A stretch of 64,000 nucleotides of DNA. Source: Zygnema circumcarinatum SAG 698-1b (Eukaryota > Plantae > Zygnematophyceae). The position numbers and the translations under genes were made by a program. Location of the stretch: contig CM074804.1 in assembly GCA_037447605.1 (NCBI GenBank), positions 806,001-870,000 of the forward strand, given 5' to 3'. The notes below the pieces were generated by a model. The model had not been told where the DNA came from, made no database searches, and saw nothing but the letters and a program-made list of their open reading frames with translations. Positions 47,040 to 64,000 of the stretch are shown here, piece after piece (the first letter of the stretch is position 1; the number at the start of each line of letters is the position of its first letter).

Positions 47040-47645
47040 TCAGAAACGCAAAAACCTGGGAGGTCTGGGAGGAGGAGCCGCCCTGGGAGGCTTAGGAGCC
47101 TCTACTTCCCTCGGGGGCTTTGGAGCCTCGAATGGCTTGGGGGGTTTTGGAGCCTCTACTTCCCTCGGGGGCTTTGGAGCCTCGAACTGCTTGGGGGGTT
47201 TTGGAGCCTCTACTTCCCTCGGGGGCTTTGGAGCCTCGAACTGCTTGGGGGGTTTTGGAGCCTCTACTTCCCTCGGGGGCTTTGGAGCCTCGAACTGCTT
47301 GGGGGGTTTTGGGGCCTCTACTTCCCTCGGGGGCTTTGGAGCCTCGAACGGCTTGGGGGGTTTTGGAGCCTCTACTTCCCTCGGGGGCTTTGGAGACTCG
47401 ACAGGCTTGGGGGGCTTGGGAGCTTCGACTGGCTTGGGAGGTTTAGGAGCTTCCACCGGCTCGGAGGGCTTCGGAGCCCCTACAGGCTTGGGGGGCTTGG
47501 GAGCCTCGACAGGCTTGGGAGGACGCGGGGGGTCCGGCCTCTCGGGCGTCTCGGGCTTCTCGGCAGCCACTGAAGGCAGTCCCGCCGCGGCGAAGAGCAC
47601 CACCAGCAGGGCGAGGACTCCGGCGACAGGCAGCGGACGCGCCAT
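47040..47645 (-). CDS. Secreted Pro/Lys/Glu-rich repeat protein (201 aa; ~16 x EAPKPPxxx nonamer), likely cell-wall PRP/HRGP
   Basis: Signal peptide MARPLPVAGVLALLVVLFAAAGLPSVAA; 27-bp repeats with a 54-bp higher-order alternation (REV / K[P/Q]F). Confidence 0.88.
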   Translation of the reverse strand: MARPLPVAGVLALLVVLFAAAGLPSVAAEKPETPERPDPPRPPKPVEAPKPPKPVGAPKPSEPVEAPKPPKPVEAPKPPKPVESPKPPREVEAPKPPKPFEAPKPPREVEAPKPPKQFEAPKPPREVEAPKPPKQFEAPKPPREVEAPKPPKQFEAPKPPREVEAPKPPKPFEAPKPPREVEAPKPPRAAPPPRPPRFLRF

Positions 47646-52014: not shown

Positions 52015-52733
52015 ATGGCGGCCCTTCAGGTGGCGGTGGAGGCGGCGCTTCGCCTGCAGCTTTCCACGGAACATCTGGTGCTTCCCTCCTGCTGCGGCAC
52101 TCACCTCTCGGCAGCTGCCACCCTCCACCCTCCCTCCTCCGTCTCCCACTCCTACCCTCTTCCCACACTCGCCAACCTCTCCCACTCCCACCTCACCCCT
52201 TTCTCCCCTCCCTCCCCCCTTTCCCGCGCCTCTCCGATCTCTTTTCTTCTCGATCTCTACTTGCCTCTTCCACTCCTCCCTTCCATCCCCGCTCGATCCC
52301 GATTTCTGCTCGCCCTGCTCTCATCTCTCTCTCGTTCTTGCCCTATTCGCCCCCTATCCTTTTCCGAATCGCTATTCGTTTCTCTTCTTCCAATCTCTTC
52401 TCTCTCTCTTTCCTCCATCCTCCACTTTCCCCTCTACCCATCCGTCTCCTCCCTCTCCCCGCCATTTGCCTTCCTCGATCCTTCCCAAGCACTCTTTTCC
52501 ACTTAAATTTCATGTGCTGTCGTCTGTTGCAGGAGGTTATGGACACCTCAGGTGGCTGCGGGTCAAGTTTTGATGTAGTTGTTGTGTCGAAGCTTTTCGA
52601 GGGAAAACGTCTTCTTGAGCGCCACAGGATGATAAACAAAGTACTCGAAAAAGAGATGCAGGAGATTCACGCCTTGTCTATTAAGAAGGCTCTTACGCCG
52701 GAGCAATGGGAGGAGCAGAAGTCGACTCTCTGA
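52015..52733 (+). CDS. BOLA2: BolA2-like protein, 2 exons
   Basis: MAALQVAVEAALRLQLSTEHL|EVMDTSGGCGSSFDVVVVSKLFEGKRLLERHRMIN...EIHALSIKKALTPEQW. Confidence 0.92.
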
Positions 52734-53541
52734 AGCCCATCTTCGCAGATTAGGGTTTGATGTACAACGCATTTTTTTTGTCTGCGCTTTTATACGCGCA
52801 TTTGATGCATGTATTACCTACAAGTAGTTCCTTTACTGCTCACCAACAACAATAGGACTCGCTACCTCAGTTTCTGAACGTAAAAAGAAGCACTGCATCT
52901 TGATGCAACCTTAGGTCATACTTTCTGCCGCATGTTGAGCAAGGAAAGTTCTCCACTAATTAACACACCCGTCCCGCCCCGCTTTTTTCTCTTTTAGTTT
53001 CTGGATATGATCATTGAGCTGGTATTGTCAGGAGGCTTAGCTCCACATGGAAAGGGTCTTCATCGCTGTTGCCTTGAAGACCGCCCTGCTAAGAGCGTCC
53101 TGCAACTGAACAGATCCGGCAACGTGCCATGGTTCACTTCACTTCGTGCGGCTTAATTGGGACTGTTTTAGGGTTTGTGATGTTTTTGGAGCGCTTTCTT
53201 TGCTTGTCGTCGTCTGCAGAGTCATGAAGTAGGCAAAGGGCATAATTTCATATTGTCATTAAAAAGTTGTAACCGTTTGAAAGTTATTCACAAAACATTT
53301 CTGCACACGGGCATAGGCTCTGTCACATGATGTCACATCGTCTGAAGTTTCTCTGCTCTTTCATTAATAGCTACTCTCTGCCTCTAAAAAAAGACTAGCT
53401 TAAAAAGTAAACAACGCTTATTCCTTCTTGCAAGGTCAGCACGCATCACGTTTGCATCCGCACTGCTCACAATAACCTTGTAACATGGAAACCCTATTTC
53501 TGCTGTACTATTGAAAAACAAACGTCTGTCAACTGCAACGT

Positions 53542-55324
53542 CTAACAGTCAAGCGTGGTGTCAAGCTCCCATTGGCTGAGATGGGCCATAAACTCGTTCC
53601 ATTGCTGCTTCCGCAACTTTAAGTACGCTTCAACGAACTCCTCCCCCAAAGCCTGCACTCGCCCCCCCTTCACATCACAATATGAGGTTGACTGTTTCTT
53701 GCAGCTGTGATTTACATCATCCAAACGAAAGGCGCCTAAGGCTGCAAACTTCACCTCTCTGAAAAACTTGGAGGCTTCCAGCTGCGCCAATGCATCGAGA
53801 AGGTTTTCGGGCAGGCTGGGCAGCACCTGCACGTTTCAGCGGCGGCTCTTGGAAACATCTTCAAAGGAATATAGAGACAACTTCAGCAATGGAAAGCTGA
53901 CTATCGGAGGCTAGGGTTAGCCAGTATTGTAGGAGGAGGTCAGTGATACAGCAATATCTGTGTCAGATGACCAACCAGGATAGAAATAGGGATGTCAAGT
54001 CAGAGCAAGGGATAGAGATAGATAGAGTGAGAGCGACACATTTGACATTTTTTCATTTTTTTTCATTTTTTTTCATTTTTTTTTTTTCATTTTTTTTTGT
54101 TTGATGTGAGTCTACTACCTTGTCGGGGTGGGGGAGGTGCCCATTCCAATCCGCTCTCGGTCCGGGGTCCGTCTGCTCGGCAATTCCCTTCATTCCTGAA
54201 GCTGCGGAAAAAAACAAATTCTCCATCGACCACACCAGTTTTCTCAGAGCCGGATTCAAGAAGCAAAAGTTTTGACTGGCTGAGTCAACAAACATACAAG
54301 GAGGGAGGCTAACAGAAACGCTAAAAAACAGTAAAGTTAAGTTAAAAAAGCATAAAGTAAAAAAAAAAAAAAAAAAGCATAAAGCATAAAGTTTAAAGTC
54401 TCTGCCTTACCGAGGAGGACTGCTTGGAGCAGATAAGGGTTCACTGCCCCATCGGCGAGCCGAAACTCAAAGCGGTTTCCCTCAGGAATGCTGAAACCCG
54501 AAAACCCTAAAATTAAACCCTCAAAGATCACAAGCGACCTCCGCTTCATTCCAAGGCAACTCAAAAAGCATTTCCTCATCTCTCTCGCTCCCTTCTCTCC
54601 AACGATTCGTTTGATTTCCTACGTTCCTTCACTCACCCTTCCAAACGAACGAAGAAAACATGGCAAACTCTGAAAGCCCTAATGTTATTCCCTCAAATGA
54701 TGCGCACCGAAGCATGTGAGTTCTGTTGTTTCCAGTGTACGATATTGATGTTGGAGCCCACGAACTTCCTGAAACAGTACTGGTGTTGGTAATCCGCTTG
54801 TAGCTGTTCACTGTTGGGTTTGTGATAGCACACATGGCCTGCACCTCACAATCGGAAAGATGTTTTAAGGGCATAAATAGATTCTACAGTTTCAGAGAAC
54901 TGAGCAGAATTAGGTTTTGGAAGCTCTCTTAGGTGAGCTCTGACCTTCGCATTTTCGAGCACTCCTCCGATGAAGTTGTAAGCGAGAGAAGAGAGACCCT
55001 ACACTCTCCCTCCCAAGTAACAGAATCAGTCACTGGCAACTGAAACTGAGCAACTTGACATCCCCTCTTCGCGCAGGGATCATTTCATGTGATCTTCAGC
55101 CATGATTTGAAATGTCGGTGGATTTTTTAGGGTTCCTAGGACAGCTGATACTCACCAGTTCACCTTTAGGATCTACAAAGAGGTTCTGCCCTGACGAGTC
55201 CCACAACGACACGTGGCAATGAGCTCCATTGCCAGTTGTATTCACAAGTGGTTTTGGCATGAAGGTGGCCCTCAGTCCTGCAGCAACTCAGGAGACAGAA
55301 TACGCGGAATTACTACTCTCTCCT

Positions 55325-55367
<43 letters not shown>

Positions 55368-55971
55368 TTGTGCCTCTCCGTTACGCCTGCTACCTCACCA
55401 AACTGGCAGTTCAAAACTTGGTGAAATGCAGGTGAGCAAAGGCCCTAACTCACCTTCAAACTACGACACAATGAAATTAGAACGAGGGAAGAAAACACAT
55501 TCTTTCAAAGGAGCCTTCTAAGTGGAGTTTATTGAGAGGGTATACCCCCTCCTCACCATGCTGCTCCGCCACTGATTTGACCATAAATTTGAAGAAAGTA
55601 TGCCGGTCGGCTGTCACGAGGCAGTCGTCGTATTCCCAATTCATTTCAAACTGCCCATTGCCATCCTGCTCGCTCCCATTCCCTTCTATTTTAAGGGTCC
55701 GATTGACAGTGTCCGAAAAGTGCAAAGGTTTTCTTTGGTTCAATTTTAGGGCTATAAGGGTTCCTAAAAAGGTCCGGCAATTTTGTTACTAAAGATTTTC
55801 TTACAGTTTTCTTTAGGGCTATCAGGATTTGAAGGGCTTTTTTCGGAGGGTTGGCACCTCATGGTCATTTTGGTACGGCTTCCAGCCGAGCTCGAGCATG
55901 TAATCGCACAGCTTTGCGATCACATCGTACTTGCGCATGAGAGCACCCTGCGGTTGAGCATGACGAGGGAG

Positions 55972-56065
<94 letters not shown>

Positions 56066-58165
56066 TGGGGAGAGAGGAGGGGGGAGGTGGGGAGGAGAGG
56101 GAGAGGGAGTGAGGGGGGAGAGGTAGGGGGAGAGGGGGGGGGGCGTGCAGGGGGTGCAGGGGGAGGGGGGGGGGAAAGGAAGGGAGAGACGGGAGGGGGG
56201 TGTGGGATGGGTGGGGGATGGGGGGAGGGGAGAGGCGAGAGAGGAGAGGGAGAGAGACAGAGAATAGAATCTTCAGTCAATGCTTTTCATATGACGCTCC
56301 CTTTGAGAAGGCCTTTAGAGTATGCAAGAAGAAACAGCCCGAGTTCAGTCATCTCCTAATCAGAAAACTGAGGTTTTGGGCTGCTAAGGCTTCCTTCCGT
56401 GGAATTTTTTTCCTCTTTTTTCTTTTTTTTTTTTCCCTTCCCGCAGTCCCCAAAGCAGACCTGGTCATAGCACGGCTTGGCGGCCGTGTCTCTGTGGTCG
56501 GAGGGCGCATGCTCTGAAGGGGAGAGAAGGAAAAATTCGCATTCGACTCCGGACTTCATCTTGAACCCATTCGCCCTCGCGATCTGCACATGCGCCCTTC
56601 AACTCACTCTTCTCGGTCACATCACATCACATCACATCACATCACATCACATACACTACTAACCAGGGTTGACATTTTCCCAAATCGAAAAAAATTCGAC
56701 ATCAGTCGTCCTGCTCTTCCCACGAAAGAGGTTGCATCAGCAAGATGAGGAATGTTGCTTTTTGAAAATAATGCTGAAGCGAAGCGAAGAAGATGTCGAA
56801 GATGTCATAAGTTCTACTTAGAAGCAAACTTTTTAGCCCTCTCGGGAGAGATCTTTATGTCCTCTTTCCGCACAGTTTCCTTGAGACTGTCCTGCACGGC
56901 CCCTTCTCCTAAAAACTGAATCTAGTTCACAACACAGAACAGGTGCAGTTGTTTGGAACTCTCATTTATAGAATTGAAAGGAATTTCACCTGCACTTTGA
57001 GCACATTTCTTGGAGCTTGCCCTAAGAGGGTGCCATCCATCACAAGGTCGCATGCAACCCACGCAACTTCCGGCTTCCATGGAAGCACCATCATGCTCGA
57101 TTCGTCTGGAAAAGCAAACTGCATATATGACAAAAGAGAGAGGCCCTGTAAGGGCTTAAGGAAGGCATAGGAGGGCACCTCAATATTTGGCTCTTCAGTA
57201 ATATGTGAGAAAATTGAGATTTCTTGAGGGCTGTTTAGCTTTTAGGGCTTGGAGGATTCGGGTTTTTTCGCATTCCGAGAATTCAGGCTTTCTATCTCAA
57301 AATGCTCTATGGCCCTTCAGGGTCATTTGTCATTCAGATATTTGAGGGCCCTGTATTCGGTCCCTTTGAAGGCGAGCCAGCTTTGTAATCAGCAGAGCGA
57401 AAAAAATGCAGAGCAGGTCTGAGAGAGCAGATGAGAGAGGATGGTTCTGGCGCAAACAAAATGAAACTTTATTTGAGCTGTGATTTCCCGAAATAGAAAC
57501 AAATTTAGGAGAAAGGCAGAAGCAGACGATGTCCGGGTGCGCAGGCGTCATGTGAAGGTAAGTCGAAAATCCCGCGAATCCGGCTCCGGCTTTCTGCATC
57601 TCTCCAATGGCAGCTCGAGGGACGAGTTTGGAGCGGCTGAAGCCGAAAAGATCGACCCAGTTTAGCTGCAATCAATCAATCAACACAAACAAAGCGATGC
57701 AATGTTCCTTCATGCCCAATGCATGGTTTGACGAACATCCCTTATACAAGCATTACAATTATTTATTCAATATATAATTTACTTATTTACGCATTTATGT
57801 GTACATATATATGTTAATGCAAACACATCCATCCACGCTGTACGCCATGGAACCCACTCCAACAAAGCATCCTGAAGCACAGATCTCGGACCCGAAAATA
57901 TGAACCCAGGCACTACTATTAGCAGTACAAAAGCTTAGCTTTCGGCGCTGACTAAAGCAACCCATCCAGCACTTGCCATGCATGCGGCCGTGACGCCTCA
58001 ACACATTCCGCCCCCCAACACATGCATGGCACGCCATGGCCCCCCCCATCCCCATGGACTCTCAACGCCCATCCCCATGGCTCCTCCCCGGGCAGGCGGA
58101 TCCGCGCGCACCAAGAAGTACTTCACGCTGGCGGGCGCCTTCGCGGAGAGCCCTTCGGTCGCCAT
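53542..58165 (-). CDS. Bacterial-type GlnT / gamma-glutamylmethylamide synthetase (GmaS)-like glutamine synthetase family enzyme, 13 exons, 431 aa
   Basis: Exons 58165-58112, 57665-57528, 57118-56990, 56583-56461, 55947-55858, 55665-55557, 55277-55156, 54998-54945, 54838-54708, 54490-54411, 54201-54119, 53826-53755, 53652-53542 (1296 nt, all GT-AG, phases consistent). Motifs: [84 protein letters not shown]-terminal TTLDC. Confidence 0.93.
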
Positions 58166-58398
58166 GGCTCTCCCTCCGTCCCACTCCCTCCCCCTCCCTC
58201 CCTCTCTTTCTCTCTCTCGCACTCGCCCTCCCTCCCCCCCTCTTTCTCTCTCCCTCTCTCTCTCTCCCTCGCTCTCTCTCTCCCCGTCCCTCCCTCTTCC
58301 TCCCTCTCTTTCAATCCCTTCCTCGCGCGCGCCTCGCCACCGACACGGCCCGCCCGGTCGGAGTGTTCGGACAGTCAGCGGCCGCGCCATTCACGGGC

Positions 58399-59060: not shown

Positions 59061-60810
59061 TCATTCCTCCATTGTTTCGCCAAGTTGGCTTCCAGAGACG
59101 CTAGCTGGAGCAGGATTGCCTGCACACAACAAACTCGCCCCATCAACCAACAGTTCGGTGTGTGACTCCATTCGATTCTGCAAAGCACCTTTGCGCATCT
59201 CTTTATCTGACTTGCATTGAAACACCGAACAAAAGTTTCAGTTTGGGTCACACCCAGACTTAATTGTCAAGTCTATACTGAAACGGTCACTTTACAAGCG
59301 GCAAGCTTTGACCGCTGAACTACAGCTCATTGGTGCAGAGTGCTCACCACTCAAACGCTTCCTTCGGTTCGTCTTCACCTTTGTCTTCTTCCCCAGCTTG
59401 AAGCCAACGCCCTTCTTTTTTATCACAACATTCTTGTTCGGAGTCTCTGCTGCCGTGCTTGAGGAAGGCTCGCCTGCAGTAGCCATGGCACATCGTTCAT
59501 GTTTGGGTTGGATTTCAGATGTATCAAACACATGAACTCACAACACAGACAGCAGTTCCAGTTTCCAGTTTCCAATATGTGGATATGAAATGCCCTTCAG
59601 AGGCGCGGACTAAGTAAAAAAATGTTCAATTCAGGAATTGTTCTGTTTGAGTACGAAAATCTTTCTGTCAATTGCTAAAAAGTTCCAGGAGTTGAGCTGC
59701 TTTTTTCGTTCAATTCAAAAGGAGAGCACGCGCAGGTCTCACCTCCATTCTCAGCAGTCAACATCTCAATGTCCTCCATCGTCACAAGGCCAGTTTGAAT
59801 GGCCTCACTCTGTGCCTGCCAGCACATTCACATAACCATCCGACAAAACGCAAAAGTAGGGGAGGAAAAATAAACTTTCAGAGTGCATACATAGTCTGTG
59901 CCCTAACAAAAGCCTTGTATTTGAGCAGTGACAATTTTTTTAAATGTCTGAAACGAGCTTTAGGTCCAACCTAGTCCTCACTCTAATCCAAACTATAGAC
60001 CTGATTTCAGTTTAGCTCCGACCAAAGTCTGACCCTAACTCTAATCTTACTCCAGACTCTACTCATAAGCCTAATTTCAATTCAACGTGGAAGCATAAGC
60101 CAATTTGATACCTGACGGTGTAATTATCGTTACAAACTAAAATCTTCACTCATACCCTCGTATACACAACCCAAGAAATCGCAAGCCAAAAAAGAAAAGA
60201 CCTGCGAACTCCCAGGACTCCCACGTACACGTAAACATAAAGGAACCCAAAAAACATGCTGAGCTACAATAACTCTACATAATTCAAGCCATTCTGCTCT
60301 AACAATTTCCAGCTCTAACCTTCCGCTAACTCGAAACCCTAACTTTTAAGTGTTCCCTACCCCGAACTTTGCCACCCACCTCATCCTGATTATAGCTGCA
60401 AACGAAACCATAATCTTAACCCTAATCTTCACCCTAATCTTCACCCTAATTTTAACCCTAAATCTTAACCCAATCTTACCCTAATCTTAACCCTAATCTT
60501 AATCTCAATATTAACCTGTAAACTTAACCCTAATCGACACCCTGAAGCGCTGCAAACGCTACAAGTTCAACCAATTATGCTCATGCTAGCCTTGCTAGCC
60601 TCCAAAACCTAAAAACCAGCATGCAATACCCCCGTGCGTGCATACTTTGCGCCATCTCCGCGCCTCCTTGCGCTGCGACTTCCCCGTGCGCTTCCCCGAG
60701 ACGGCCACTGCATTCGTCTGGTGGGCCACCAACGCCTTCTTCTTGCGATCCTTGAGCTTCTCCTTGCGCACCTTGCTGAACTCCAGCGTTTTCTTGTTGA
60801 ACTTATTCAT
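59061..60810 (-). CDS. Small Lys/Arg-rich conserved protein (possibly nucleolar/ribosome-biogenesis related), 4 exons
   Basis: MNKFNKK...VSGKRTGKSQRKEARRWRK|AQSEAIQTGLVTMEDIEMLTAENG|EPSS...KKRLS-like tail|...ETMEE*. The SGKR...RRWR...GLVTMEDIEM pattern resembles an uncharacterised plant family (from recall). Confidence 0.65.
60410..60534. repeat. Degenerate telomere-like 12-mer array (AACCCTAATCTT) in an intron
   Basis: About 8 imperfect CCCTAA-containing units. Confidence 0.7.
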
Positions 60811-61532: not shown

Positions 61533-64000
61533 TGTTGAGAATCCGACATTCTCAGTTTTGTCGTACTATTTTGTCGTTTTCCCAGCCACGTGTACTTACA
61601 CCTGGCTGTGCTTTTAGCTTGTACTTTTCTGTTAGTTTAGTTGTACCTTTGCGGCTGTGTGCTTCACACCCGGCCGCCCTTGCTCAGGCTAGTTCCNNNN
61701 NNNNNNACGTTAATCACACATCTGTCTTTTTGTGTCAACTCTCTCTGTCCTCACTTTGATCGTACAATGTCCACTCCGTCTTTTTCAATAGGTTATGGGC
61801 CCACTCATGCCTCAAATGCGCTTGAAAAATTTGATGGGACAAATTGGCACGACTGGACGTTTCAGTGCCAGCAGCTTTTTGAGGAAGAGAATCTGTGGTC
61901 TGTCGTTACTGGTCTAGAGACCTGTCCTTTGCCACTTCCCTCCACACGGCCAGGCGGCCGCCAGCAGCTGCGCGGCGAAGGAGGAGATGCGCCGATTGGA
62001 CAAAAGCCCAGCGACAAGAAGTTTCTCCATCACTTCGGCATTAAGTAGCGGTCTCGCCGGACCGTCCGTGGCGCCCGCAACTCCCACGGCAGCTTGGACT
62101 CTCGCCGACCAATCGCGTCTGAACACCGGAGTGGTCTCACAGAATTCCGTTTGCGGCGTGCCTTCACTAACTGCGTAAAGGAATCCTCTGAAACCATGCT
62201 GACATATACTGACCGCGTCAAATCCTTTGCTAGACGGCTTCGCAGCATTGATTGCGTAGTTCATGATGATGAGATCATCTGTAATCTTTTAGGCGGGCTG
62301 CCCGACTCTTTCCGGTCCTTCATCTCGTCCATTGATGCTGCCTCGATCTCACTAACCGTCGCTGATCTGACCGACCTTCTTTTGAACGAGGAGGAAAAAG
62401 ATTCCACCCCCTCCAGATCCTCCCACGCGTCCGCGCTTTTCGGATCTGGTCCTCCACCGCCCAAGTCTCCTGGCGCCCTCTTTTGTCGGTATTGCAAGGA
62501 ACAGACTCACGTAAAGGACAACTGTCCCGCTCTGGCCAAAAAGGAGGCGCGCCGACTTTTGCCGCGCCCGTCCGTACCTCCGCCCGCTGGCGCGGCAAAT
62601 ATCGCGGCGCCCTCTGATTTGGCCCCTGCGATTCGGTCCCCCGCTGAACCTGTCGTACAGCTTACGTGGCCACCCTCCCTCACGTTCCCTACCGCTCCCT
62701 TGGTCCCGCCGCCCGCCGCCCTTGAAGTACACCCTCTTCTCTTCACCCGGCCCCGGCGGCCGCCTTCCCACCGGGTGTCGATACATGGTGCTCGAGGATT
62801 CGGTCCACGCCTTCGACGCGGACCCTTTAGGTGAGCCTTCTCTCCACGACTCCGCGAAACCCCGTGACTCGGGTGCCTCCCATCATCTAACTTTTAAATT
62901 AGGTATTTGGTTCTCTCGGCTCTCTCCCTCCCTCTCCCCATGACCATTTTCTTGGGGATAACCCGGCTCGCCAGTACCTTACGCGTATGCGGCGAGGTTT
63001 CCACTCCTGGTGGCTGACGGTAGCTTCATCATCGATGGCGTCTACCTGGTGGATGGCCTCGCAAAGAATCTGTTTTCAGTAGCCTCCATCCTGATTTTAG
63101 GCATTTCAGCTCTTTTTAGGCCAGACGGGGTTACTTTCTTCACCCCAGACGCTGTAGTTGGGCACGGCCGCAAAACCGGCCGCTTGTTTTCCCTTACCTC
63201 TTTTGCAGCCTCCCTTGGGCACGCCCATGTTCACACCACTGACCCCCCCCTTACCTTTGCTCGGTGGCACCTCCGCTTTGGCCACCTTGCTGAAAGTAGC
63301 CTCAGAACTCTCGGACAGGGCTTAGTGTTAGGTTTAGACTCTTTCTCTACCGACAAGTTAGACTTTTGTTCAGGCTGTATTCAAGGGAAAATGACAAGAT
63401 TGCCTTTTCCCTCAAGCTCCACCCTTGTCTCTGAGCCTCTGGCACTCATTCATTCTGATGTCTGTGGCCCTATGCGTGATGTTAGCCTCGGCGGCGCATC
63501 ATACTTTGTCACTTTCATTGACCAAGCGACTCATTTTTCCATGTTTTCCCGCCAGCTCACAGAGTCGGCGTTTTTCTCACGTTTCGAGTTCAAAGCCGTC
63601 TGAGACCCTTCTCGGTCGCCGCGTAAGACCGCCGCTTGATAACGGAGTTTATGTCCACCGCCTTCTCCACATACCTTCGCTTTCACGCAGATCACCCATC
63701 GCACTACCGCCTCCCTACACCCCCCAAAGAAATGGAGTCGCCGAAGTGTTTAATCAAGCATCTATTCTATTGCCATGGCTCGCTTATGCTTCATTTTGCC
63801 GACCTCCCTAGCCACGGTAGGAAGCCATCTCCTGACCCTTGCAGCGGACAGCACCCCCCACCTGCGCCCTTCCTCCACGGCTCCCTCTGAGGGCTGGCGG
63901 CAAGCCCCTCCGTCTCCCACCTCCGTATTTTTGGGCTGCGAGGCTTGGTAGAAGATCCACTGAATCGGTCGTCGGCAAAATAGGGACGTAGCGGGCCGTG
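61533..64000 (+). mobile_element. Ty1/copia LTR retrotransposon, frameshifted, running out of the window
   Basis: 5' LTR 61533-61790 (TGTTGA...TCAATA); PBS GGTTATGGGCCCA 61791-61803; gag LEKFDGTNWHDW, zinc knuckle CRYCKEQTHVKDNC; protease DSGASHHLT; WHLRFGH...CSGCIQGK; integrase LIHSDVCGPM...YFVTFID, PYTPQRNGVAE. Confidence 0.93.

What the first reader, a model, noticed from the sequence alone, without database searches (positions are those of the whole stretch)
53542..58165. Intact, 12-intron bacterial GmaS/GlnT-type gene in a plant-lineage nuclear genome: candidate horizontally acquired methylamine/alkylamine assimilation enzyme
Seen: 13 GT-AG exons splice into an uninterrupted 431-aa ORF with no transit or signal peptide. 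The introns carry host-style GA/CT tracts, so this is not bacterial contamination. Established: the motifs ([52 protein letters not shown], terminal TTLDC) and length match the proteobacterial GlnT/gamma-glutamylmethylamide synthetase clade. That enzyme ligates methylamine to glutamate in the N-methylglutamate pathway and also makes theanine from ethylamine. It is distinct from plant GSII and from NodGS/FluG-type GSI. Inference: an old bacterial transfer gave this organism a cytosolic route to scavenge or detoxify methylated amines, or to make gamma-glutamyl amides. No N-methylglutamate synthase or dehydrogenase genes are in this window, so the downstream route is unknown.
Basis: partly seen in the sequence, partly recalled or inferred. 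Interest (0 to 1): 0.88.

Follow-up and report, generated by a model that had tools for sequence, protein, structure and literature searches.

The report
Algal methylamine-fixing enzyme gene, anciently inherited
This alga transcribes an intact gene for a bacterial-type enzyme that probably attaches methylamine to glutamate; the gene is old, shared intron for intron with other plant-lineage genomes and related to a nitrogen-starvation gene of a marine alga, which suggests that some algae may capture methylamine nitrogen themselves.

Summary
The gene is real: 13 exons, 12 GT-AG introns, 431 codons, minus strand. RNA-like contigs from four studies skip five introns exactly and support a sixth. 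The protein is 57-64% identical to alphaproteobacterial-type GmaS/GlnT. It keeps all 25 structurally defined GmaS positions checked, including Trp300 and Ala49, which replace the ammonia-handling residues of glutamine synthetase. It is not a private or recent transfer. An unnamed plant-lineage contig carries an orthologue (63%) with all 12 introns at the same position and phase, and three more loci share the introns they cover. More distant homologues with targeting-like N-termini occur in Aureococcus and other algae; the Aureococcus gene is published as 'GS type III' and rises about 16-fold under nitrogen limitation. The bacterial donor, and one versus several acquisitions, are unresolved. 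No N-methylglutamate synthase genes lie nearby, so the downstream route is unknown and activity is untested. I found no paper describing a eukaryotic GmaS. Earlier scan notes report a different, 10-intron GlnT-like gene elsewhere in this genome (unchecked). Verdict: new member of a known family in an unremarked host range.

The parts
58112..58165 (-). Exon 1 (aa 1-18), start codon at 58165
   Evidence: aligns to the bacterial N-terminus; following intron shared with L003, L108, L109
57528..57665 (-). Exon 2 (aa 19-64): K31, and A49 in place of the GS Asp50' ammonium ligand
56990..57118 (-). Exon 3 (aa 65-107)
56461..56583 (-). Exon 4 (aa 108-148): metal ligands E121, E123; pocket residue Y146
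55858..55947 (-). Exon 5 (aa 149-178): Y173, Q174, catalytic D176, E178
55557..55665 (-). Exon 6 (aa 179-215): catalytic E185, N187, W188, Y190
   Evidence: loose ends
55156..55277 (-). Exon 7 (aa 215-255): G230, H234, H236, S238
54945..54998 (-). Exon 8 (aa 256-273)
54708..54838 (-). Exon 9 (aa 274-317): gate loop 287-305 with R288 and W300 (GS Glu-flap position), R312, R317
54411..54490 (-). Exon 10 (aa 317-344): E325, R327
54119..54201 (-). Exon 11 (aa 344-371)
53755..53826 (-). Exon 12 (aa 372-395)
53542..53652 (-). Exon 13 (aa 396-431) and stop codon
58166..58390 (-). Open in-frame upstream stretch from an ATG at 58390 (75 codons, Arg-rich start, then GA repeat); use unknown

Best explanation
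The gene encodes a working GmaS-type glutamate:alkylamine ligase, an old streptophyte gene of bacterial ancestry kept without its bacterial operon. Chemistry (inferred from RhGmaS, PMC7948447): ATP binds and orders the 287-305 loop; glutamate is phosphorylated with R312 and Mg ions; D176 deprotonates methylamine; E185 resolves the tetrahedral intermediate, giving gamma-glutamylmethylamide. Most likely role (inferred): high-affinity capture of methylamine or ethylamine, from the medium or from internal amine turnover, as a nitrogen-scavenging step, probably in the cytosol. Shown: structure, splicing, transcription, residues, clade, shared introns. Not shown: activity, substrate, location, regulation in this alga, and the fate of the product.
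For: 25/25 RhGmaS positions conserved, including W300 and A49 (numbering). 57-64% identity to bacterial GmaS; 45 of 46 full-length bacterial loci fetched with exon 2 carry mgsABC (annotated examples). RhGmaS Km is 27 uM for methylamine and 8.7 mM for ammonium. Transcribed and spliced in 4 studies. All 12 introns and all 25 positions shared with L108 at 63% identity, which implies long purifying selection. The Aureococcus homologue Auran1|55217 rises log2 4.07 under N limitation and falls about log2 4.2 on resupply, the largest induction in that table (PMC4206512).
Against: No mgsABC or mgd homologue in the window or beside any eukaryotic homologue. The protein differs at 16 of 163 columns that are at least 95% conserved in bacteria, several in the gate loop (290, 291, 298, 299) or beside catalytic residues (180, 233). 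The same pocket residues are kept across all TIGR03105 members checked, so they do not by themselves fix the amine. Microalgae are said usually not to metabolise methylamines (PMC7574528). The regulation data come from a 49%-identical homologue in a distant lineage.
Confidence: 0.6

Rival explanations
1. Same chemistry, shifted substrate: the streptophyte enzyme glutamylates another amine (ethylamine to give theanine, ethanolamine, or another small amine) to make a metabolite or store nitrogen.
For: Substitutions shared with L108 at 180, 233, 298, 299, 364 and 365, around the active site and gate loop. RhGmaS already accepts ethylamine at Km 58 uM. The Nostoc GlnT of the same clade sits beside an SDR and an alpha/beta hydrolase, not mgsABC.
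Against: All seven residues lining the methylamine pocket are unchanged. The top-scoring bacterial relatives are mgsABC-linked.
Confidence: 0.2
2. Dead-end trap: the enzyme neutralises methylamine (an ammonium analogue) as gamma-glutamylmethylamide for storage or export, with no nitrogen gain.
For: No downstream N-methylglutamate genes found near any eukaryotic copy.
Against: It costs glutamate nitrogen and ATP, which fits poorly with induction of the Aureococcus homologue under N limitation. The rest of the genome could not be searched.
Confidence: 0.12
3. An auxiliary, low-affinity glutamine synthetase, as the database label 'type III glutamate-ammonia ligase' says.
For: RhGmaS turns over ammonium at the same kcat. 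The Aureococcus homologue is annotated as GS and follows N status.
Against: It lacks the GS Glu-flap glutamate and the Asp50' residue (W300, A49). RhGmaS has a Km for ammonium about 300 times that for methylamine.
Confidence: 0.07
4. Origin rival (independent of function): one very old eukaryotic acquisition, possibly organelle-derived, shared by streptophytes, pelagophytes and other algae and mostly lost, rather than a separate transfer into streptophytes.
For: Without the long outgroup all eukaryotic rows fall on one side of a branch (87/39). Eukaryote monophyly is not rejected (p-AU 0.19). Several algal homologues have Arg/Ser/Ala-rich N-terminal extensions.
Against: The streptophyte rows are closer to bacteria (up to 64%) than to the other algae (49-58%), are separated from them by a 100/99 branch, and share no intron with the two mapped.
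Confidence: 0.35

Closest known systems
Gamma-glutamylmethylamide synthetase GmaS / GlnT (TIGR03105, EC 6.3.4.12); RhGmaS, PDB 7CQL family, PMC7948447
   Same: Length, collinear domain order, all 25 positions checked (ATP, Mg, glutamate, methylamine pocket, catalytic, GS-distinguishing); 57-64% identity to alphaproteobacterial-type members.
   Different: Nuclear 12-intron eukaryotic gene; no mgsABC/mgd neighbours; substitutions in the gate loop and next to the active site; activity untested.
Aureococcus anophagefferens GS5 / Auran1|55217 (XP_009040958.1), 'glutamine synthetase, type III'
   Same: Same family (scores above the TIGR03105 cut-off) and same key residues except Y190F; eukaryotic nuclear gene.
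   Different: 49% identity; its 99%-identical copy L115 has one GC-AG intron at another site; about 34-residue N-terminal extension; head-to-head with a PhyH-family dioxygenase; not recognised as GmaS in the paper read.
Unnamed plant-lineage orthologues L108, L109, L110, L003 (ENA/Logan assemblies)
   Same: Identical intron positions and phases (12/12 in L108); 61-67% identity; one clade, 99/98.
   Different: Different gene neighbours; L003 has a short N-terminal extension; organisms not identified.
Type I glutamine synthetase GlnA, and PuuA gamma-glutamylputrescine synthetase
   Same: Same fold family and gamma-glutamyl-phosphate mechanism.
   Different: 29-35% identity to the examples fetched; GlnA has the Glu flap and Asp50'; exon scores far below TIGR03105.
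Physcomitrella GS acquired from CFB bacteria (PMC3493653), plant GSII, NodGS/FluG-type GSI
   Same: Glutamine-synthetase superfamily members in the plant lineage, some of bacterial origin.
   Different: Different families: the moss gene is assigned to a Bacteroidetes donor; GSII and NodGS differ in length and domain content (own knowledge); this protein has no amidohydrolase domain.

Membership tests
GmaS/GlnT (TIGR03105) | Collinear match along the family model | tested here: met
   9 of 10 exons scanned hit TIGR03105 best, in order from model position 16 to 435
GmaS/GlnT (TIGR03105) | Whole-protein score above the curated cut-off of 469.6 | not tested
   The joined model was not sent to search tools. 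A more distant homologue (Aureococcus) scores 540
GmaS/GlnT (TIGR03105) | Catalytic Asp177, Glu186, Arg312 and methylamine pocket (Tyr147, Gln175, Asp177, Glu179, Glu186, Asn188, Lys30') | tested here: met
   numbering through
GmaS/GlnT (TIGR03105) | Trp and Ala in place of the GS Glu-flap glutamate and Asp50' | tested here: met
   W300 and A49
GmaS/GlnT (TIGR03105) | Groups with the alphaproteobacterial-type GmaS subclade | tested here: met
   100 support against the Paraburkholderia/Acinetobacter type
GmaS/GlnT (TIGR03105) | Prefers methylamine over ammonium; dodecamer | not testable with these tools
   Needs enzyme assay and sizing
N-methylglutamate pathway (gmaS + mgsABC + mgd) | N-methylglutamate synthase and dehydrogenase genes near gmaS | tested here: not met
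   No tblastn hit in the window or in eukaryotic loci
N-methylglutamate pathway (gmaS + mgsABC + mgd) | mgsABC/mgd elsewhere in the genome | not testable with these tools
   Only this window is readable; scan notes hold no such finding, which proves nothing
GSI GlnA (TIGR00653) | Glu-flap glutamate and Asp50' ammonium ligand | tested here: not met
PuuA gamma-glutamylputrescine synthetase (NF045547) | Best family match | tested here: not met
   Lower score than TIGR03105 in every exon that hit both
NodGS/FluG-type GSI | N-terminal amidohydrolase domain | tested here: not met
   The 431-aa model begins at the GmaS N-terminus; the defining feature is from own knowledge
Lineage-specific horizontal transfer | Absent from other eukaryotes and nested in a bacterial donor clade | tested here: not met
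   Orthologues with shared introns; not nested in any bacterial subclade
Ancient bacteria-to-streptophyte transfer | Identifiable donor; eukaryote monophyly rejected | tested here: inconclusive
   AU tests reject none of three placements

The most novel reading that the evidence does not exclude
Streptophyte algae, probably some land plants, and bloom-forming marine algae have their own methylamine assimilation route: GmaS makes gamma-glutamylmethylamide, and a non-bacterial second step (for example oxidative N-demethylation to glutamine by an Fe/2-oxoglutarate dioxygenase, like the PhyH gene head-to-head with the Aureococcus homologue) replaces mgsABC. This would overturn the view that algae need bacteria to use methylamine nitrogen, and would mean that gmaS reads in metagenomes are not purely bacterial.
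Probability: 0.15. Interest if true: 0.85.

Novelty: new member of a known kind. Interest (0 to 1): 0.55.

Why it matters
Methylamine use through GmaS is treated as a bacterial trait; gmaS serves as a marker for methylamine-using bacteria (PMC7948447), and microalgae are said usually not to metabolise methylamines (PMC7574528). An expressed, long-conserved GmaS in streptophytes, with a nitrogen-starvation-induced homologue in a brown-tide alga, makes a direct test possible with one recombinant enzyme and one labelling experiment. It also suggests that some eukaryotic 'GS type III' annotations are mislabelled GmaS, and it offers a candidate source of theanine-type amides in non-flowering plants. 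The family and its chemistry are known, so this is a new host range and not a new kind of system.

Tried and rejected
Contamination: rejected (12 spliceosomal introns, spliced transcripts, host neighbours). Pseudogene: rejected (intact frame, conserved residues, transcription). In-frame retention of the 102-nt intron 12: rejected as the main form (spliced in all four runs). Recent private transfer: rejected. Searches that led nowhere: the search for homologous proteins with the last exons and with P0007 found no further relatives, and with a bacterial query returned only Rhizobiales; viral contigs held none; two Atlas look-ups gave only generic GS clusters; a single-sequence fold of the Aureococcus protein was unusable (pLDDT 40), so no fold search was run. 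Nine topical literature searches found no description of a eukaryotic GmaS; a search for the L003 run accession was blank. L003, L108-L111, L119 and L122 could not be named to species. The joined protein was never sent to a shared search tool; it was used only inside closed scripts.
Full report
OBSERVATION. The finding is a minus-strand gene of 13 exons: 58165-58112, 57665-57528, 57118-56990, 56583-56461, 55947-55858, 55665-55557, 55277-55156, 54998-54945, 54838-54708, 54490-54411, 54201-54119, 53826-53755 and 53652-53542. All 12 introns are GT..AG, and the joined frame is 431 aa with one terminal stop; exon GC is 0.54 and intron GC 0.46. Searched exon by exon, nine of ten exons hit TIGR03105 as best family at successive model positions. 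Exon 2 hits the solved Rhodovulum GmaS 7CQL. I did not search with the joined model in any shared tool; it was used only in closed scripts.

EXPRESSION. Seven runs from four studies hold 42-53% of the words of 53480-55300, about the exon share. Contigs from four studies skip introns 7, 8, 9, 10 and 12 at the predicted ends, show no differing letters, and continue at 55278 into exon 6. Intron 11 has no listed joint, because it lies at a skipped repeat; a retaining contig has about a tenth of the exon depth or less in three runs and up to a fifth in one. The upstream parts of the contigs measure 451, 352 and 697 nt, which equal exons 3-6, exons 4-6 plus a 30-nt overlap, and exons 1-6 plus 54 nt. 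The runs are not on record as RNA, and contigs give neither level nor strand. The gene lies tail to tail with a BolA gene and has a copia remnant about 4 kb upstream.

FAMILY. The model is 59.6% identical to Rhizobium etli GlnT and 57.3% to Ruegeria GlnT; both sit in mgsABC and dimethylamine monooxygenase clusters. Best identities are about 64%, to Xanthobacteraceae. Of 46 full-length bacterial loci, 45 carry mgsABC. A Nostoc plasmid GlnT of the same subclade (57.8%) does not. All 25 positions taken from the RhGmaS structure paper (PMC7948447) are identical in the model. They include catalytic D176, E185 and R312, the seven methylamine-pocket residues, and W300 and A49, which that paper names as the differences from glutamine synthetase. 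The model departs from 16 of 163 near-invariant bacterial columns, some in the gate loop and next to the active site.

EUKARYOTIC RELATIVES. Among the best 150 hits of exon 2, several read through introns. L108, a 306-kb contig with a MON1-like neighbour (weak Pfam hit) and a neighbour that resembles a plastid BASS transporter (own knowledge), holds a complete 441-aa orthologue, 63% identical, with all 12 introns at the same position and phase and all 25 key residues. L109, L110 and L003 share every intron they cover. These five rows form one clade (99/98), with the window gene sister to L003 (95/81). I could not name these organisms; a bryophyte for L108-L110 is a guess. Four other eukaryotic loci (L111, L115, L119, L122; 49-58%) are more distant; the two whose introns I mapped (L111, L115) have them at other sites, and L111, L115 and the L122 cluster carry Arg/Ser/Ala-rich N-terminal extensions. 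L115 is 99% identical to Aureococcus anophagefferens AURANDRAFT_55217. That gene is listed as 'glutamine synthetase, type III' in PMC4206512, with log2 +4.07 under N limitation and -4.20 and -4.16 after urea or nitrate resupply. It lies head to head, 49 nt apart, with a PhyH-family dioxygenase. A 34% relative of that dioxygenase lies next to gmaS on one bacterial contig out of about 95 loci; the window has none.

ORIGIN. The streptophyte clade is not nested in any bacterial subclade; it branches beside the whole alphaproteobacterial-type group. The tool warns that the outgroup attracts the long algal branches. AU tests reject neither all eukaryotes as one clade (p 0.19), nor streptophytes with Nostoc (0.41), nor streptophytes with Xanthobacteraceae (0.36). 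Bacterial ancestry is inferred from the family's distribution; donor and number of events are open. My bacterial sample is biased to genomes that matched an exon-2 pattern and holds one cyanobacterium. Rows left out of the trees: near-duplicates, three GlnA/PuuA-like outgroups, and the partial rows and the outgroup.

MECHANISM. Shown: an intact, transcribed GmaS-family gene conserved through long plant-lineage evolution. Inferred from family knowledge: ATP-dependent formation of gamma-glutamyl phosphate and attack by methylamine, with micromolar affinity for methylamine and ethylamine and millimolar for ammonium (RhGmaS). Inferred more weakly: nitrogen scavenging, from the regulation of the Aureococcus homologue. 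Unknown: the next step, since no mgs or mgd homologue is in the window or beside any eukaryotic copy. An unchecked scan note reports a DUF3445 protein elsewhere in this genome; DUF3445 genes lie in the dimethylamine monooxygenase clusters beside bacterial gmaS, so it could supply methylamine, but I did not test it. Location is probably cytosolic because the model starts where bacterial proteins start, as do L108 and L109. An in-frame ATG 225 nt upstream is not excluded.

NOVELTY. The family, fold and chemistry are known. My literature searches found no paper that recognises a eukaryotic GmaS, and one paper states that microalgae usually cannot metabolise methylamines. The library lacks most subscription journals, and automatic annotations already label the Aureococcus protein, so database-level novelty is low. 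The moss glutamine synthetase transfer of PMC3493653 is assigned to a CFB donor and appears to be another gene. Two scan notes describe a separate 10-intron GlnT-like gene in this genome, read as cyanobacterial and guanidine-linked; I could not compare it with this one. Verdict: new member of a known family in an unremarked host range, with a directly testable physiological claim. Interest 0.55.

Noticed in passing
window 52521-52733 (+): Last exon of a BolA gene, convergent with the GmaS gene; one RNA-like contig runs from the GmaS last exons to about 52504, so the two 3' UTRs probably overlap.
   Followed up: partly
window 53653-53754: Intron 12 is 102 nt, in frame and free of stops, but is spliced out in all four runs.
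   Followed up: yes
window 53827-54118: Intron 11 is retained in a minor contig (depth 9-33) in all four runs.
   Followed up: partly
window 61770-63800 (+): Ty1/copia remnant (gag and pre-integrase domains by Pfam), broken into pieces.
   Followed up: partly
window 47040-47645 (-): ORF with a signal-peptide-like start and a Pro/Lys/Glu-rich 9-residue repeat (27-nt tandem, about 16 copies); no Pfam hit; looks like a secreted wall or matrix protein.
   Followed up: no
window 60406-60535: About 11 copies of a 12-nt unit that resembles plant telomere repeats, inside a gene region.
   Followed up: no
L123 9061-11498; L115 745-3183: In Aureococcus the GmaS homologue is head to head (49 nt) with a PhyH-family Fe/2OG dioxygenase whose closest solved relative is MysH; both N-termini look like targeting peptides.
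   Followed up: partly
L100 5783-9311: Nostoc plasmid glnT of the alphaproteobacterial-type subclade sits behind an SDR and an alpha/beta hydrolase, without mgsABC; a 40% relative of the hydrolase lies near gmaS in marine alphaproteobacterial locus L061.
   Followed up: partly
L108 12424-12550; L115 2072-2141: GC-AG introns: intron 10 of the L108 orthologue, and the single intron of the Aureococcus-type gene, which has short direct repeats at its ends.
   Followed up: no
L003 1-3571: The GmaS orthologue is divergent from a phosphofructokinase-like gene and has a 14-residue longer, Ser/Ala-rich N-terminus and Gly at the Ala49 position.
   Followed up: partly
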